NCBI GenBank assembly: GCA_001179505.1
Contig: CDMY01000989.1
Span: 124,001 to 188,000 of the forward strand
Direction of reading: 5' to 3'
Source of the DNA: Vitrella brassicaformis CCMP3155
Lineage: Eukaryota; Protista; Chromerida
Length of the DNA: 64,000 bases
How positions within the stretch are numbered: the first letter of the stretch is position 1; every line of letters starts with the position of its first letter. The notes beneath the pieces are model-generated. The model was not told where the DNA came from, searched no databases, and saw nothing but the letters and a program-made list of their open reading frames with translations. Position numbers and translations under genes: made by a program. This document shows positions 18,921 to 25,878 of this stretch, piece by piece.

Positions 18921-20078
18921 GGGGCGTTCGGTCTTTGTAGTCAAGTCGGGAAACGGGGCCAAAGGGGTGGAAGGGGTGGGTAGACGGAGAGCGTCTGATG
19001 TGTGAGGGCTGTCTCTCTCATGTATGAATGAAGCCGATCTGCAGAAGCAACTATGCGATTATGGCTGACTGGCTGGCTGGCCTACATTCCGACTGACAAA
19101 GACCAGGGCGTCTGGTAGGCAGGGTGTGTTGTCGTCACTGATCTGGATGGCCGGCCGGCCGGCCGAGTGAATGGCCAACGTTTGCAGTGACCTCTGACTG
19201 ACTCGTGCAAATGAATGCACTGCACTCATTCTTGGACGTGTCGTCACCCATCCATAAAGAGCACCACACACAGATAAGATAACACTTACAGGCAGATGTC
19301 CCAAAACTGTCCCCTCCCCTGACCTGACCCACCTCTCTGTGCATTGCAATGTGCGGAGATGCAGCTCTCGCGTGCGCTCTCTCTCTCCCCTCATCGCTCT
19401 GCGATCTCATGAGAGAAAAAATCCTACACACTGAGCGCGGCACACACATGCAGGGTGACCGGCAGGCAGGCTGGCTCCTCTCCCATGTGAATAATAAAGG
19501 TGCACACGTAAGATGCGATGGCCGCCAGCCAGCCAGCCGATCGGAAGCGATAGCGGTAGCAAGCAAACATGCACACAGAACACGGGACATCTGGGTATGT
19601 ATGTGTGTGTCGGTCGTCGTACTTGGAGAGGCTCTGCCGGGGCGATGGTGGATGACAGCTCATGTGGCACAAAAGTCCGCCCGCGGCATCCATCCGTCAT
19701 TGCGCAAACTCCCTCCGTCCCCATCATTCATTGTCCTCACTGGCCGGCCTGGTCTGCACTCCCGCTCTCGCGATTCAAAGGCACTCACACACAGAAAACA
19801 CACACAGACAGACAGACAGTGAGGGGAGCACTCGCTGCCCCCTGTCTCTCTGCACGCAGTACTCACGTGGGTGAGCATCACTCACCCACATCCACCGCCC
19901 CCCGCCCACCTACCCACACCTAGTATACTCACCCCCCCCACCCCCCACCCCCCTCCCATCAACCCTCCGTATGCTGACGCGTACCGATAAACGACAGACA
20001 CCCATACCCTACACAACAGAGAGTCCCTCTCTCTCTCTCTCCCCGCCCTCCCCGCCCCTGTCGCCCTTCTCTTCATTG

Positions 20079-21904
20079 TCAGGCCATCTTGGTCTCCCGC
20101 ACTGCACGGTCAAGAAACTCACCTAAGTCTCCCCTCAAATGCCCGTGGGGCGCTATCGGCGCATCGACCTGGCGGCTGCTGGTGATGGTGCTGCTGACAA
20201 GGTCTTGTTGCTGCTGCTGCTGCTGCTGTTGTCCATCATCCGTCGTACTCTGCAGCATCAGCAGCTGCCGCTGCCCGTCGGTCAGCTCAGTCTCCACAGC
20301 GTCGAGCTCACTCGATAACAGCGACGGCAGATTCTGCAGCCGCTCGCTGACTTGTCTGATGGAGGGTGCCGGCGCCGGGCCACCCGCCTTGACGTCCACC
20401 TTCACGGGTGGCAGCCGCTCTATCACCACCGGCACGCCCTGCGGCCCCTTACGCTCGGGCGGCAACGCCGCTGCTGGAGGGGGCGAGTCGCCAGACAGAA
20501 AGGGCAGCCGCAGCTGACCCAGTAAGGGTATGGAGGGGCCGGGGGCGGGTGCTGCTGGGGCGGATTGCTGTGGTTGGGTGGTGGCTGGTGCCTTCATGGG
20601 CGATGGTTTGAACTCTGTGACGGCCGAGGGCGGGGTCTGTGGCGGTGGTGCGCCGGCGTTGACGCCGTCGGTGGCGAAGTAGAGAGAGGAGGCGATACCA
20701 ACTGTCAAACCAACCACAGACAAGCAGGATACACACAGGAGGGATGGCTTGTCTCTCACTCCCCCTCTGTCTGTCTGAGTGTGGCTACCTACCTGCCCAT
20801 AGCCCAGCAACGATGAACATGAGTTTCATGCCGATGCCATTGCCATTGTTGGCCCCAGCCACAGCCCCCGGTGGCTTGACGGCCACCACACCGCCGGTGC
20901 TGGCGCCACCAGTGGTGGTGGCCGCCACCAAACCACCCGGCCCCTCATCAGTCGTCGTCGTGGCAAGAGCTGTCACAGGTGCCGGTGCAGGCGCCGTATC
21001 GGCAGTGGCTCCGACTGGTGTAGGGGGTGGGAAGCCGGCCGGGGCTGCAGGTGGCGGCGGACCGCCCATGCCCTCCTGACACACACGCACACACAAACAG
21101 ACAGACAGACAGGTACATCCACCGAGTGGCTGATTGCCTGTGCGTGTGTTGTTTCGCCCGTAGTGTCCACCTCACCACAGGTGTCCTGGGTCCCCTCCTG
21201 GCTGCCTTAGTCTGGTCCAGCAGCTGCCTCCCGATGCTCAGCGCAGCCACCGGGGCCAGGCCTGCCGCCAGCCCCTTGCCGAACCCCTCAGGCACCTCCA
21301 GCTCCAGAGCCAGCGCCCTCGTCAGCCCCTCGTCGACAACCTCCTCCTCTGTCTTCTCTTGTCTCTTCTTCTCAGCCAGCTGCACCTCTGGCTGGGGAAA
21401 CATGGTCGGCTCAGGCCCAGGCGTCGGCAGCGGCCGCCGTGTGACGGCTTTGGGCTCCAGCCTGTCGGCGATCTGCGCCACGCGGCCGCGCCAGTCGACC
21501 TCTGGGTCGATCCGCGGAGTGGTCACCACCGGCCGCAGGGAGGGATCCAGCTGATACTCGATCTGCTTGACCGCGTCCTTGAAGTCCCAGTCATCCTCAC
21601 CACCGCCTTTGCCTTTCTTGGGCGGCGGCGTGGCCGAGGGCGGGGGCGCCGTGCGGCTGCTGGGGAGCTTGAACGTGTCGATGCCGATGCGGAAGTCTTC
21701 CTCCATCGGCTGGTTGTTGGCGTTCAGGTGTGTGTGTGTCGATGGGCTGCGCTGGAGCGATGTGACCACTGGGGGAGGTGGGAGAGGGAGGGGTGCGAAG
21801 GCCGGCGCCGCTGGGAGGTCTGACTGCAGCGTGGCTGCTGACACGATTGAGGGGATGCGGAAGAAGACAAGAGCCGGGAAGATCACCATCATTGCCGTCC
21901 TCAT
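20079..21904 (-). CDS. Pro/Ala-rich membrane protein with N-terminal signal peptide (paralog A; probably plastid-targeted)
   Basis: MRTAMMVIFPALVFFRIPSIVSA..PAFAP. Hydrophobic segments LAAGLAPVAALSIGRQLL and LMFIVAGLWA/VVGLTVGIASSLYFAT. Three exons. Confidence 0.7.
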
Positions 21905-22563
21905 AGCGCTGTGGTCACAGCAGCCACAGCAGCAGCAGGGGAGGGAGGCACCTGACAAGGGACACACACACACACGACCAATGCAGCACAGCACAGCATA
22001 GCACAGCGTAGCGCATATGGGGTCACAGGTGCTCTGGCCAATGCCGCGCTTTGCGTGATCTGACTGCGTCGTCTCCCACTCCTCACTCCTCACTTCTTGC
22101 CTTGCCTTGCCTTCACACGCATCAAACGTGACCAGCACATCCCGCCTCTTCTCACCTTCCTGTGCAGTCGTCAAACCACGGCAATTCGCCGAGAAAGCCT
22201 TGCCTCTCCAGAAGTTCGCTGGCTAAGCTCGCAGGCGGATCGTCGGAATTTTCCGCACAAAGAGGGCAGGAGGGAGCAGAGGGGCTTAGATCTGAGGGTG
22301 CTGGATACTGCTCTGTGAGGATTTCAAGCTGATCACCACTTGACGGCTATCTCACTCTGGGAAGCTTGTGGATGGCAGATTGGAGGGAGCTGAGGCGGCG
22401 AGGGTGAAGGCACGGCACCTCTGGAACGGTACGTGTGTGGTTTGCTGACTGATCTCCACCAAGCACACATCTGCCTATGTTTGCATCTATGCTGCATTCC
22501 AGATCCCCCCGGTCAGGCCATGCGTCGCATCTCGACGCCTCCCCCTGCAGCACAACGCTCCTA

Positions 22564-25500
22564 ATGCCCGTGTCAACGCTGCTGCTGTCCCTCCTCGCCT
22601 GTCTGCACTATGTGTCAGCCTTCACTTTGGTCTCCCGTCCCACCGTCCCCTCCCTCTCCCGCACCTTGCAACCTCTCAGGCGGCATGACCATCAGCATCG
22701 GCATCGGCAGCGTCTGTCGGCCTCGACTGACTTCAAGATCGAGATGGACATGGGCACACTGCCCTCGGCACCGACCGTCAGACCACCCCCTCCCCCACCC
22801 ACACCCCCGCCCACACCCCCGCCGCCAGTAGCTGCCGAGCAGGCTGCTCCTCCTGCACCTGCCTCTGAGGCGCCCGCTGCTTCGGCTGGTGCTTCTGCTC
22901 CTGCTGTTGGTGATGCCGCTAGCCCGACTGTGAGTGAGGGTCAGCAGCAGCCGCCGCCGCAACAGCAAAGTGAGGCGAGTGGTGGTGGCGGAGAGGTCAA
23001 GGCGGCGGAGGCCGCTGCTACTGCTCCTGCTCCTGCACGCCCTGCAGAGGGTGAGGCGGCGCCAGCAGCCGCGACAGCGACAACCGCGCAGCAGCAAGAG
23101 CCGCCATCTCCAGCCCCTCCATCAATGGAGCCAGCTCCTCCAGCGGCTGCCGATCAGCCCAAGGAGTCAGTGGAAGACAAGCTGACGCGTGCGATCCTTG
23201 AGAAAGAGGAGGAGGCGGCAAAAGAGCCCGAGCAGCCACCATCAGAGACTGCTGTGGCTGAGGGCGAGGGCGAGGTTCAGGCCCAGGAGGGCGCCAAGAC
23301 AGAGGCCACAGCAGCGACGGAGGGGGGAGGGGCTGAGGGTGAGGGTGACTTGGCTGCGGGCAAGGAGGAGGGCGAGGCTGCCCCGAGCGAGGAGAAGCCG
23401 GAGGTGGCGGAGGCGCCTCCGCCGCCCTCACCGGCACCCTCATTGGAGGAGGCGCAGAAGGTGCTGGAGCCCGTCAAGGGTCTCAAGATACCTGAACTCG
23501 CCGCGGGGGTAACCTAGCCCACACAGCACAGCACACATACACACGATAAAGAAATACGGGTATGTCACGGCTGTGTGTGCGTGTGATTCGATTCCTTCCC
23601 TCACTCAGGTAGGTGCCGGTGCGTTGCCGTGGGTGATAGTTCCGGTGGCGGCCCTCAGCCTCGGGAGGCAGCTGCTCGACACCACCAAGGAAGCCAGGGC
23701 ACAGGCACAGTTCAAGGTGGGCAATGGACACACAATGAACAGGACGAACGAACGAACGAACGAAGGACTGCCGATAGTGACGTGTCGATGGTGTCTGTGT
23801 GTGTGTGTGTGTGGACGTAGGATGAGTTGGCTGAGAGTGAGAGGAAGGCGGCAATCGCCAAGGACCAGGTACACACACACAGACACACACACACACACAC
23901 ACATGGCCCGCCGTATGCCACCAATCATCCCCTCTCCCTCCCTCCCTCCCCCTGTCAGGCGTATGCTGCGATGGCCAAGAGCCGGGAGCCCCCCAAAGGC
24001 ATCGGGATGCTCGCCGCTGCAATCGCCGGAGGTAACGACAACAAACCACAGCCACAGACACAGCAGCGAGGAGGGGCAACAGCAGCAGCCGCAGCCACAG
24101 CCAGCACCGGCACCAGCAAATCAGCTACACCCCCTGCACAGCAACAACCAGCAGCCCAGCAGCAGTCAGCAGCAGCAGCAGCCAGGAAGCCCTCCGTGTC
24201 CCCAGCACCCTTCCTGTCCGGGTGGCGATCTGGCTGGCGCTCCGGGATGCCCCAGCCACAGCAACCGAAGACAGCAGCTGCCCCCAAGAAGCAGCAACAG
24301 CCGCAGCAGAGGCAGCCAGTGCTGCAAGCCACCGCCTCAGCCCCGGCAGGCAAGAGGCAGCAGACACAGCCACAGGCACAGCCGCCCCAGCCCCGTCGCT
24401 ATTCGCCCCCCCCATCCCCGTCCCCGCCGGCCGCCCCCTCCTCCACTAAAGTGCTAGAGGGTGCTCGTTCATCTCTCACGGACCTCCGCGTTGTGCTTGC
24501 AGTCGGGATCGCCTCGTCGCTCGGACTCCTCTACGCCACCACCGTCCTCACCAATGGCAACAAGACGCCACCTGACTTCATCCAACAGCAGCAGACCAAG
24601 ACGCAGACACTGCCGACCAAGCCACAGGGTGCGGCGGTGCTGCCGAAGGAGCCCGAGGGGAGGCCTGCGCTGCGTGACCTGAAGCTGCCGTCGTTCTTTG
24701 GCGGCGGTGAGGAGATCCAAGGCACTGAAGGCAGCGAGGGCGAGAGGAGGGAGGAGACAACGGCGGCAGCTGGCAAGGAAGTGGTCAAGACAGCAGAGGA
24801 GAAGCCGCCGCCACCACCAGAGGAGCCGGAACCGTCACCACAGCCAGCTGCCCCAGTGTTCAAGCTGCCGTCGTTCCTGGGCGGCGAGGACAAAGACAAG
24901 GCACCTGAGGAGGCAAAGGAGACAGCACCCGCTGCACCTGCCCCACCAGCACCAGCCGTCACTGAAGCCGAGACGAAGGAGGCCGCCCCATCAGCCGCCC
25001 CACCAGCCGCTGTTGTCGAGCCGCCCAAGCCATCGGAGGGCTTCCAGCTGCCATCCATCTTCGGCGGCGGCGGCAAGGAAGAGGTCAAGAAAGAGGCGGC
25101 CCCGGCCCCCCCTGCAGCAGTGGTGGAGGAGACGGCCAAGAAAGAGGAGACCGCAGCTGTGGCTCAGCAGCAGCCAGAGGAGAAGAAGGAGCAGCCGGCG
25201 GCCAAGACGGAGGAGGTGGCAAAGGTCGAGCAGAAGAGGGCAGACGAGGAGAAAGCCGCCCCCTCCGCTGCCCCTGCTGGCGTCAGCGAGCCACCCGCCC
25301 CTCTCGCCAAACAAGAAGAAAAGGTGGAGCCACCGCCACCACCACCATCACCAGCACCACCTGCAGCAGAGAAGGCACCACCCGCAGCCACAGCCACAAC
25401 AACGGCCGAGAAAGAGGTGTCTGGGTCGCAAGAACCGCCTGCTCGTGTGTCTGAGCAGCTCAACAGCATGCCTGTGCGGGTCATGATCGAGCCACCGCCC

Positions 25501-25878
25501 AAGCCAAAGCCACCACAACAGCCGCAGCCGACCACCACGGCCGAGAGGTCTGCAGCCGGGGGTGGAGAGGAGAGGAAAGCCCTGGTGGACCTGACGGGCA
25601 TCTTCAAGAGGCAGGGGCCACCGGCGGGGGGCGAGGAGGGTGCTGCGACGGCCGAGGAGAGTGGGAGTGGAGGCGGTGAGAAGAAGGCGCCCGCACCGGC
25701 GGCGTCAAAAGGTGAGCAGCACAGATCACAACAAGTGCGTTGATCTTTGCCATGGTGCTCTGGTGTGTGTCTCTCTGTGTGTGTAGGTGTGCCTGACCGA
25801 TCTGATTTGGTTGACAAGCTGAAAAAGCTGCGGGGCGACCTGCAGGCACAGGCAGACAAGAAGACTGAGACCGAGTGA
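22564..25878 (+). CDS. Pro/Ala/Glu/Gln-rich membrane protein with a bipartite signal + transit-like leader (paralog B; probably plastid-targeted)
   Basis: MPVSTLLLSLLACLHYVSA|FTLVSRPTVPSLSRTLQPLRR..RQRLSA: signal, Phe at +1, then an Arg/Ser-rich stretch. Hydrophobic segments ALPWVIVPVAALSLGRQLL and VVLAVGIASSLGLLYAT. Last exon GVPDRSDLVDKLKKLRGDL..TETE*. Confidence 0.75.

What the first reader, a model, noticed from the sequence alone, without database searches (positions are those of the whole stretch)
20079..25878. Head-to-head pair of paralogous, probably plastid-targeted, disordered membrane proteins sharing only short motif islands
Two divergent genes 660 bp apart share a collinear series of motifs. 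A/B pairs: DFRIGIDTFKLPS/DFKIEMDMGTLPS; LTRALALE/LTRAILEKE; PVAALSIGRQLLDQTKAAR/PVAALSLGRQLLDTTKEAR (16 of 19 identical); LTVGIASSLYFAT/LAVGIASSLGLLYAT; LGQLRLPFLSG/LRDLKLPSFFGG; VSERLQNLP/VSEQLNSMP; LRGDL in both. The linkers are diverged P/A/E/Q low-complexity sequence. B has a signal + Phe + Arg/Ser leader of the kind known for secondary red plastids, and A has AFAP near its N-terminus. Inference: an unrecognised co-regulated family of two-anchor plastid membrane scaffolds (thylakoid shaping or pyrenoid tethering), possibly a heterodimer.
Basis: partly seen in the sequence, partly recalled or inferred. Interest (0 to 1): 0.72.

Follow-up and report, generated by a model that had tools for sequence, protein, structure and literature searches.

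The report
Unnamed plastid membrane-anchored disordered protein family
Two back-to-back genes of the alga Vitrella, plus a third copy elsewhere, belong to an unnamed family of mostly disordered, membrane-anchored chloroplast proteins. Diatom-like algae have it too, and its function is still unknown.

Summary
Every quoted motif is at its coordinates. Transcript contigs confirm two expressed, spliced, divergently transcribed genes: A on the minus strand (544 aa) and B on the plus strand (about 981 aa). Their coding starts are 660 bp apart, and their transcript 5' ends lie at most about 75 bp apart.

Only three parts are statistically similar:
- the hydrophobic/amphipathic block (PVAALSxGRQLLD);
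- the transmembrane helix (VGIASSL);
- between B and C only, the stretch between them.

The other motif islands are not above compositional chance in A versus B. Several of them do recur in distant homologues.

New here:
- a third paralogue, C (512 aa), on another contig, also confirmed by transcripts;
- an exhaustive profile search that found 13 further proteins, all unnamed apart from one automatic TonB label. Most whose N-terminus is present carry diatom-type ASA|FAP plastid leaders and the same collinear architecture.

No member tested matches Pfam, and the four full-length proteins and two B exons tested match no NCBIfam model. The PDB gives no meaningful match.

So an unrecognised plastid-targeted family is supported, and it is wider than a pair. 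A's own leader is ambiguous. Co-regulation is plausible but unmeasured. Heterodimerisation, thylakoid shaping and pyrenoid tethering remain untested. My working model is a hairpin-anchored disordered tether that displays short linear motifs.

The parts
20079..20701 (-). Gene A, last coding exon. It holds the second half of the TM helix (VGIASSLYFAT), LRLPFLSG, VSERLQNLP, a long predicted helix and the C-terminal helix ...EFLDRAVRETKMA. The stop codon is at 20079-20081.
   Evidence: Joint 20701/20793 in the two transcript-like runs. L008-L010 are collinear to about 20060. There is no splicing at the GTGAGT at 20122. AF2 helices at 448-507 and 526-539.
20793..21075 (-). Gene A, middle coding exon: a P/A/T-rich linker and the first half of the TM helix (GIGMKLMFIVAGLWA).
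   Evidence: Transcript contigs L008-L010. P0001 equals the model. Hydropathy peak 1.95.
21176..21904 (-). Gene A, first coding exon: signal peptide (MRTAMMVIFPALVFFRIPSIVSA|A), DFRIGIDTFKLPS, and the conserved block with its core at 21197-21253.
   Evidence: P0001 is 100% identical.
22153..22209 (-). Gene A 5'UTR exon. It follows a UTR intron at about 21949-22152.
   Evidence: Joint 21948/22153. L008/L009 5' ends map to 22206/22209.
22210..22284 (.). Shared divergent promoter region between the outermost observed transcript ends of A and B.
   Evidence: A transcripts reach 22209. The B contig starts at 22285 (record 8). Contig ends are minimum extents, so the gap is at most about 75 bp.
22285..22428 (+). 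Gene B 5' leader exon with an 11-codon uORF (ATG 22372). The leader intron is 22429-22502.
   Evidence: Joint 22427/22502 GT..AG. ORF scan of the spliced leader.
22564..23508 (+). Gene B first coding exon: signal peptide MPVSTLLLSLLACLHYVSA|F, an Arg/Ser-rich transit-like stretch, DFKIEMDMGTLPS, an acidic A/P/E linker, and LTRAILEKE.
   Evidence: First ATG giving a long ORF in the spliced leader. Joint 23507/23608. Composition and charge.
23609..23716 (+). Gene B block exon (GALPWVIVPVAALSLGRQLLDTTKEAR...).
   Evidence: Joint on its 5' side. It matches C at E = 1e-7 and A at E = 1.6e-3 genome-wide. It forms an 82% identical, 57-nt inverted repeat with 21197-21253.
23821..23868 (+). Gene B 48-nt microexon (DELAESERKAAIAKDQ), flanked by complementary (GT)n and (AC)n tracts.
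   Evidence: GT..AG boundaries and the reading frame. Contig-length arithmetic (record 4). Same-size microexon in C, confirmed by P0002. Flanking repeats.
23959..25711 (+). Gene B large exon. It holds GIGMLAAAIAGG, a 157-codon insertion (24032-24502), the TM helix VVLAVGIASSLGLLYATTVL, three ~60-aa repeats each carrying [FL][KQ]LPS[FI][FL]GG (DNA 24682-24706, 24862-24886, 25045-25069), and VSEQLNSMP.
   Evidence: family D11. Transcript-like contigs cover it in pieces.
25787..25878 (+). Gene B last exon: the C-terminal amphipathic helix motif (SDLVDKLKKLRGDL...) and the stop codon.
   Evidence: Joint 25709/25785 in both transcript-like runs. Aligns with the C-terminal motif of C and of the distant homologues.

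Best explanation
A and B are expressed paralogues, and a third copy, C, lies on another contig. All three belong to an unnamed protein family shared by this chromerid alga and by algae with diatom-type plastid leaders.

Each protein has seven parts, in this order:
1. An ER signal peptide plus a transit-like stretch, that is, a bipartite plastid leader.
2. A short acidic N-terminal motif.
3. A long disordered tail.
4. A conserved Pro-containing hydrophobic segment that runs straight into a basic, charged amphipathic helix.
5. A small-residue-rich transmembrane helix.
6. A second long disordered or extended-helical tail carrying LPSF-type short motifs. B has three tandem copies.
7. A conserved C-terminal amphipathic helix.

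Shown: gene structures, expression, paralogy, the wider family, predicted disorder, and the absence of any known domain.

Inferred: the proteins are imported into the plastid. The two hydrophobic segments anchor them in a plastid membrane. The tails act as flexible spacers or tethers, and their short motifs and terminal helices recruit still unknown partners. In short, a membrane-anchored scaffold rather than an enzyme or transporter.
For: - Gene models and expression: spliced joints and full-length transcript contigs. P0001 and P0002 are identical to my A and C models.
- Paralogy: block E-values and shuffle z-scores. A and C share a phase-1 intron immediately before (G/A)(I/V)ASS. B and C share a 48-nt microexon.
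- Wider family: the profile search of 1.84 billion representatives gave 15 hits at E <= 1e-3.
  - The hits repeat features that were not in the query. These are an N-terminal signal with Phe at +1, an LxDLExKL motif, K/P/A-rich linkers, a second TM helix, LPS motifs, and a C-terminal ...FLKxLKK helix.
- Disorder and helices: AF2 models and hydropathy.
- Leaders: Phe at +1 in chromerid plastid leaders (PMC6668581).
- Selection on the motif: the three LPSFFGG repeats are 80-92% identical over 25 nt, while their linkers give no repeat match.
Against: - No localisation, topology or interaction data exist for any member.
- A has Ala rather than Phe at +1 and an almost uncharged post-signal stretch.
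- The first hydrophobic segment carries two conserved prolines. AF2 models it as continuous with the following helix, so it may be monotopic or re-entrant rather than membrane-spanning.
- The composition of the tails is not conserved: acidic in B, basic in C and in the ASAFAP-type homologues. The tails may therefore be mere spacers without specific partners.
- The taxa of the environmental homologues were not verified.
Confidence: 0.55

Rival explanations
1. Thylakoid-shaping factor. The hydrophobic hairpin plus the adjoining amphipathic helix would bend or stack thylakoid membranes, as a functional analogue of CURT1 in algae that lack it.
For: - The arrangement 'hydrophobic helix followed directly by a basic amphipathic helix' resembles my recollection of CURT1. 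That is a lead from memory only.
- No CAAD/CURT1 (PF14159) exon-level match was found in this genome at E <= 1.
- The family is shared by algae with red-derived four-membrane plastids.
Against: - No member hits the CAAD model at E <= 1.
- The tails of 180-420 residues are far longer than anything in CURT1.
- The missing CAAD hit may be due to introns.
- There are no ultrastructural data.
Confidence: 0.12
2. Pyrenoid tether. The membrane anchor would sit in pyrenoid-associated thylakoids, and the repeated motifs would bind Rubisco or another matrix protein, like the Chlamydomonas Rubisco-binding membrane proteins.
For: - V. brassicaformis has a large pyrenoid (PMC6379472).
- B carries three evenly spaced copies of a conserved short motif.
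- A has one DWRGRV, which fits the Chlamydomonas Rubisco-binding motif pattern. The chance of this is 0.6%.
Against: - The DWR motif is single and absent from B, C and all homologues.
- Chromerids use form II Rubisco without small subunits (for Chromera, PMC3468483 abstract). Ochrophytes use form ID (my knowledge). A Rubisco-binding motif conserved across both is therefore unlikely.
- A and C each carry only one LPSF-like motif.
Confidence: 0.1
3. Not plastid proteins. They would be secretory-pathway or cell-surface Pro/Ala-rich membrane proteins, for example linked to the multilayered cell wall.
For: - A has a plain signal peptide with Ala at +1 and no basic transit-like stretch.
- P/A-rich extended sequences are typical of wall proteins.
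- Vitrella has a multilaminated wall (PMC6379472).
Against: - B and C have Phe at +1 followed by basic, hydroxylated, almost acid-free stretches.
- All seven ASAFAP-type (diatom-like) homologues whose N-terminus is present show the A|F(A/M/V)P junction.
- The family profile's N-terminus weakly matches presequences of light-harvesting FCP proteins (E 0.2-0.4, not significant).
Confidence: 0.1
4. The similarity is a low-complexity artefact, and the two genes are unrelated.
For: The N- and C-terminal tails are no more similar than locally shuffled sequence.
Against: - Block z = 10-13, with leave-one-out profile E-values of 4e-5 to 3e-10 at a database size of 1.84e9.
- The block is the longest inverted repeat in the region: 57 nt at 82%.
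- The genes share exon structure with C.
- Independent homologues show the same order of elements.
Confidence: 0.02

Closest known systems
Chlamydomonas Rubisco-binding membrane proteins RBMP1/RBMP2 and other motif-bearing pyrenoid proteins (Meyer et al. 2020, PMC7673724)
   Same: These are plastid membrane proteins in which transmembrane helices are joined to disordered regions that display short linear motifs. This is the concept of membrane-anchored multivalent tethering.
   Different: - There is no sequence relationship.
- The defining motif [D/N]W[R/K]xx[L/I/V/A] occurs once in A and never in B, C or the homologues.
- The Rubisco form differs.
CURT1 / CAAD domain proteins (Pfam PF14159)
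   Same: Both are small-residue-rich membrane helices next to a charged amphipathic helix in a photosynthetic membrane protein. This resemblance is recalled from memory.
   Different: - No member matches the CAAD model at E <= 1.
- CURT1 proteins are short and lack the tails of several hundred residues.
- No CAAD hit was found in this genome.
TonB-type periplasm-spanning proteins
   Same: Both combine a membrane anchor with Pro-rich (KP/EP-like) extended spacers. One homologue is automatically labelled 'TonB' by its source.
   Different: There is no TonB C-terminal domain and no Pfam or NCBIfam match. The label rests on low-complexity sequence only. These are eukaryotic proteins with plastid leaders.
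Tic62 / TROL (plant membrane tethers for ferredoxin-NADP reductase)
   Same: Both are plastid membrane-attached proteins whose Pro/Ser-rich flexible regions carry repeated short motifs that dock a soluble enzyme. This rests on my own knowledge and was not tested.
   Different: There is no dehydrogenase or rhodanese domain and no detectable sequence similarity. The motif consensus differs.

Membership tests
The unnamed family defined here (Vitrella A, B, C plus P0003-P0019) | Conserved block G-[VL]-A-x-G-A-x-P-x(3)-[AV]-P-x(2)-A-x(3)-G-R-x(2)-L-x(2)-T-x(3)-R, scoring against the three-sequence profile | tested here: met
   - A scores 62.5 bits and C 90.1 bits in the library search.
- B scores 82 bits locally.
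- A lacks the five residues ALPWV.
The unnamed family defined here (Vitrella A, B, C plus P0003-P0019) | A second, small-residue-rich transmembrane helix 40-200 residues after the block | tested here: met
   Hydropathy peaks of 1.95 (A), 1.94 (B) and 1.72 (C). AF2 helices. Present in P0003, P0011, P0019 and in the second exons of L018 and L020.
The unnamed family defined here (Vitrella A, B, C plus P0003-P0019) | Bipartite plastid leader: a signal peptide with an aromatic residue at +1, followed by a basic, hydroxylated stretch | tested here: inconclusive
   By eye only, as no SignalP or ASAFind was available. B (VSA|F), C (SNA|F) and the homologues (A|FAP, A|FMP, A|FVP) fit. A (VSA|A, with AFAP 13 residues later) does not clearly fit.
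The unnamed family defined here (Vitrella A, B, C plus P0003-P0019) | C-terminal amphipathic helix (acidic residue, then [FL]L[KQ]xLK-like) | tested here: met
   Alignment of eight C-termini. The helix at 526-539 of A scores among the highest pLDDT values in the model (last 10-residue block, mean 86). The match is degenerate in A.
CURT1 / CAAD (PF14159) | Match to the CAAD profile above the gathering score | tested here: not met
   No hit at E <= 1 for any exon of A or B, nor for P0002, P0003, P0011, P0017 or P0019.
Chlamydomonas-type Rubisco-binding-motif proteins | One or more [D/N]W[R/K]xx[L/I/V/A] motifs, usually several or C-terminal, that bind the Rubisco small subunit | tested here: not met
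   One internal match in A only and none in B, C or 18 homologue sequences. Binding is not testable here.
TonB | TonB C-terminal domain | tested here: not met
   No Pfam or NCBIfam hit. The name comes from one automatic annotation.

The most novel reading that the evidence does not exclude
The family is a membrane tether specific to red-lineage plastids. It would set the architecture of thylakoids or of the pyrenoid-thylakoid interface in chromerids and ochrophytes.

The Pro-kinked hairpin would anchor the protein. The long tails would act as spacers of defined reach. Contacts between neighbouring molecules or membranes would come from three sources:
- the acidic N-terminal helix;
- the basic C-terminal helix;
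- the oppositely charged tails of different paralogues (acidic B, basic C).
Probability: 0.15. Interest if true: 0.8.

Novelty: new variant of a known kind. Interest (0 to 1): 0.5.

Why it matters
How algae with red-derived four-membrane plastids organise their thylakoids, pyrenoids and envelopes is largely unknown at the molecular level. Most known organisers come from green algae and plants.

This is a conserved, expressed, plastid-leader-bearing membrane family with no domain annotation. It is present both in a chromerid and in diatom-like algae, which makes it a concrete candidate for such a role. It can be tested directly in transformable diatoms.

It also shows that 'orphan' low-complexity genes in chromerid genomes can hide ancient families that are recognisable only through a core of 30-40 residues.

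Tried and rejected
- Word-index protein search with the large B exon found nothing, not even itself. Low-complexity words probably swamped the candidate list, and B is fragmented in the transcriptomes.
- Word-index search with A exon 1 found only A's own transcript protein. The same search with the family alignment added only one EukProt protein.
- ESM Atlas look-alike searches for A and P0019 gave no usable hit.
- The Pfam, NCBIfam and PDB sequence searches found nothing meaningful. The PDB hits were a K/P/A-rich viral protein and FCP presequences.
- MAFFT alignments of exon fragments against full-length A were misaligned. I did not use them for the profile search.
Prokaryotic and metagenome contig scans were therefore not done.
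- The supplements of the chromerid targeting paper do not contain these sequences.
- Three literature searches for a characterised diatom or chromerid member found none. This does not prove that none exists.
- Fold searches were not run. The models are two or three isolated helices at pLDDT 55-66.
- Complex prediction was not run. I make no binding claim, and B has no single reference sequence.
- Joined step left out: the spliced B model was never sent to a search or folding tool.
  - B was searched exon by exon.
  - Joined A, B and C models were used only inside local scripts, for composition, hydropathy and pairwise statistics.
- I considered and rejected a shared intron with the ASAFAP-type homologues. 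Their TM-helix intron is phase 0 and lies about four residues upstream of the Vitrella phase-1 intron.
Full report
**The sequence and the gene models**

The window is GC-rich eukaryotic DNA with short GT..AG introns full of (CA)n and (GT)n tracts. I used that as a lead and did not verify it.

*Gene A.* From splice-site inspection, gene A has coding exons 21904-21176, 21075-20793 and 20701-20079, giving 544 aa.
- Contigs of two transcript-like runs show the joints 20701/20793 and 21074/21175. They also show a 5'UTR intron at about 21949-22152.
- Three full-length transcript contigs from two JGI samples and one Logan run reproduce the model exactly.
- The database protein P0001 (540 aa) equals my model from residue 5.
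- The GTGAGT right after LRGDL in A is not used as a donor. Transcripts run collinear through the stop codon.

*Gene B.* A transcript contig removes 22429-22502, which contains the upstream ATG at 22477.
- The spliced leader holds two short uORFs. The first long ORF starts at ATG 22564 (MPVSTLLL...).
- The coding exons are 22564-23508, 23609-23716, 23821-23868, 23959-25711 and 25787-25878, giving about 981 aa.
- The introns after B1 and after B4 are confirmed by joints in both runs.
One 571-nt contig does have exactly the length expected for B4 start + microexon + block exon + B1 end (358+48+108+57). Paralogue C has a same-size microexon at the same place.

*Arrangement.* The outermost observed transcript ends are 22209 for A and 22285 for B. 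The two genes therefore share a divergent promoter region of at most about 75 bp. Both are present in both transcript-like libraries. Contig data cannot give expression levels, so co-expression is not shown.

**Is the similarity more than chance?**

- BLASTP of the spliced models finds one significant segment. A 202-236 matches B 336-374 (residues numbered from the ATG at 22477) at 55% identity and E = 1.8e-6.
- I also ran a segment-wise Smith-Waterman test against locally shuffled sequences:
  - block: z = 10-13 for all three pairs;
  - transmembrane block: z = 2.4-4.9;
  - stretch between block and TM helix: z = 5.9 for B-C;
  - long N- and C-terminal tails: z at most 2.4.
- The 57-nt core of the block is 82% identical at the DNA level. 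It is the longest inverted repeat in the region.

The paralogy is therefore real, but it rests on about 60-80 residues. The other 'islands' are not individually significant between A and B.

**A third paralogue**

Six-frame searches of the whole assembly with the block found exactly one further locus, on contig C267. My seven-exon model of this gene C is identical over all 512 residues to a transcript-derived protein, P0002.

C shares the following with its paralogues:
- with B: the GALPWV extension of the block, the 48-nt microexon, a phase-1 intron before the last exon, Phe at +1, and an 'R-x-SAS-x-D' junction;
- with A: a phase-1 intron immediately before (G/A)(I/V)ASS in the TM helix, and the C-terminal ...KMA.

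At that same phase-1 position B has a 471-nt, stop-free segment with exon-like GC content. It begins GT and ends AG, and transcript contigs run through both of its ends.

**A wider family**

A phmmer-type search with A alone would have been powerless: the blocks of B and C score E = 46 and 860 at library size. Leave-one-out block profiles reach 4e-5 to 3e-10. I therefore used the one exhaustive search on the three-sequence block profile.

It returned 15 proteins at E <= 1e-3. Two are A and C. The other 13 come from metagenome, metatranscriptome and Logan contigs. A later word search added one complete EukProt ORF, P0019.

These hits repeat features that were not in the query:
- N-terminal signal peptides ending ...A|FAP, A|FMP, A|FVP or A|FYVP, the ASAFAP-type junction of ochrophyte plastid leaders;
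- a short transit-like stretch;
- an acidic LxDLExKL motif, which aligns with C's SLDIDFGDVLSNIEDRLEG;
- K/P/A-rich linkers;
- the block, followed by a basic and then mixed-charge helix;
- a small-residue-rich TM helix;
- LPS-type motifs;
- long A/E/K- or V/E/K-rich helical-looking tails;
- a conserved C-terminal helix (...VDPAFLQSLKK, ...DDVKxFLKTLKK). This aligns with B's SDLVDKLKKLRGDL, C's KEMLERLQKLRQ and A's EFLDRAVRETK.

In the ASAFAP-type genomic contigs the gene is split by an intron inside the TM helix. That intron is phase 0 and lies about four residues upstream of the Vitrella intron, so I do not call it shared.

No member tested matches Pfam, and the proteins tested match no NCBIfam model. 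The PDB profile search gives only a low-complexity viral protein and, non-significantly, FCP presequences. The sources call the proteins 'hypothetical', or in one case 'TonB', evidently because of the KP-rich spacer. I could not identify the taxa of the environmental sequences.

**Targeting**

- B reads ...HYVSA|FTLVSRPTVPSLSRTLQPLRRH...
- C reads ...STSNA|FLPPTLPSHTH...RRPPSLTRRSAS...
- Both fit, and both are followed by basic, Ser/Thr-rich, almost acid-free stretches.
- A reads ...IVSA|ATLQSDLPAAPAFAP... It has Ala at +1, an early Asp and almost no net charge.

No SignalP or ASAFind was available, so these are readings by eye. At family level, plastid import is the best-supported destination. 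For A specifically it is open.

**Structure and likely mechanism**

- Hydropathy shows three hydrophobic segments in each paralogue: the signal peptide, the block, and the TM helix.
- AF2 with the family alignment models A as mostly disordered, with 270 of 540 residues below pLDDT 50. Helices fall at the block, at the TM helix, at 448-507 and at the C-terminus.
- The core of C is modelled as one long helix (hydrophobic segment plus amphipathic helix) followed by the TM helix, at mean pLDDT 66.
- Within the block the invariant positions are G, P, R, L and R. A second Pro, an L, the G before the R, and a T are nearly invariant. That is more than a generic anchor would need.
- Tail composition is not conserved: net charge is -24/-17 in B, +8/+9 in C and about neutral in A. 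The N-terminal tails of the ASAFAP-type homologues are Lys/Pro/Ala-rich by eye.
- B has three ~60-residue repeats. The 25-nt motif cores are 80-92% identical, while the linkers between them give no repeat match.

My reading is a membrane-anchored, intrinsically disordered scaffold or tether. The two hydrophobic segments hold it in a plastid membrane. The tails act as spacers, and the short motifs and terminal helices dock partners. The anatomy is shown. The membrane, the topology and the partners are inferred.

Three more specific versions remain possible: thylakoid shaping, pyrenoid tethering, and an envelope-spanning spacer. Evidence bearing on them:
- No CAAD/CURT1 hit was found in this genome, which leaves room for another shaping factor.
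- Vitrella has a large pyrenoid.
- A has one Chlamydomonas-type DWRGRV, with a chance probability of 0.6%. It is absent from every other member.
- The family's shared motifs are conserved between a form II Rubisco alga and algae with ASAFAP-type leaders, which as ochrophytes would carry form ID Rubisco. That makes a conserved Rubisco-binding role unlikely.

**Comparison with known systems and verdict**

Functionally the closest concepts are membrane-anchored, motif-bearing tethers: Chlamydomonas RBMPs, plant Tic62/TROL, and bacterial TonB-like spacers. The CURT1 hairpin-plus-amphipathic-helix design is also close. Every membership test I could run for these families failed.

The finding is a real, previously unannotated protein family with an ordinary kind of architecture. 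I score it as a new variant of a known kind, of moderate interest. Its interest would rise sharply if a role in red-lineage plastid architecture were shown.

- Read laying was given 5,991 letters.
- The joined B model was not sent to any search tool.

Noticed in passing
window 24032-24502 (+): Gene B has a 471-nt (157-codon) stop-free, Q/A/P-rich segment with exon-like GC content. It starts GT and ends AG in phase 1, exactly where paralogues A and C have a phase-1 intron before (G/A)(I/V)ASS. Transcript-like contigs run through both ends unspliced. It could be an exonised intron or an alternatively spliced 'exitron'. Removing it would restore an A/C-like TM helix (GIGMLAAAIAG-V-GIASSL...).
   Followed up: partly
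window 22285-22566 (+): The B leader has an intron (22429-22502) and two uORFs: ATG 22372 (11 codons) and ATG 22520 (14 codons). The stop of the second overlaps the main start as TAATG, an arrangement that suggests termination-reinitiation control.
   Followed up: partly
window 23791-23903 (+): The 48-nt microexon of B (23821-23868) is flanked by complementary (GT)n (23791-23813) and (AC)n (23871-23903) tracts. These could pair across the exon in the pre-mRNA.
   Followed up: no
window 21479-21496 (-): A contains DWRGRV. This matches the pattern of the Chlamydomonas Rubisco-binding motif and sits inside a short predicted helix. It occurs in 0.6% of shuffles, is single, and is absent from all relatives.
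   Followed up: yes
whole assembly G000: There is no exon-level match to the CURT1/CAAD domain (PF14159) at E <= 1 in this genome. The same search found the domain above its cut-off in one of the 14 control genomes and, more weakly, in two more (Synechococcus elongatus among the three).
   Followed up: partly
G000:C267:53900-56977 (locus L003, minus strand, about 301-2371): Third paralogue (gene C): seven coding exons and 512 aa, confirmed by transcript contigs. Its tails are basic where those of B are acidic.
   Followed up: yes
window 20042-20067 (-): One A transcript contig (L008) skips 26 nt in the G-rich repeat of the 3'UTR. This is probably a repeat collapse or polymorphism rather than an intron.
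   Followed up: no
L018:504-2509 and L020:523-2421: In ASAFAP-type (diatom-like) genomic contigs the homologous gene was called as two separate proteins. The cause is a phase-0 intron inside the TM helix. Prokaryote-style gene calls in the public collections therefore truncate this family.
   Followed up: yes
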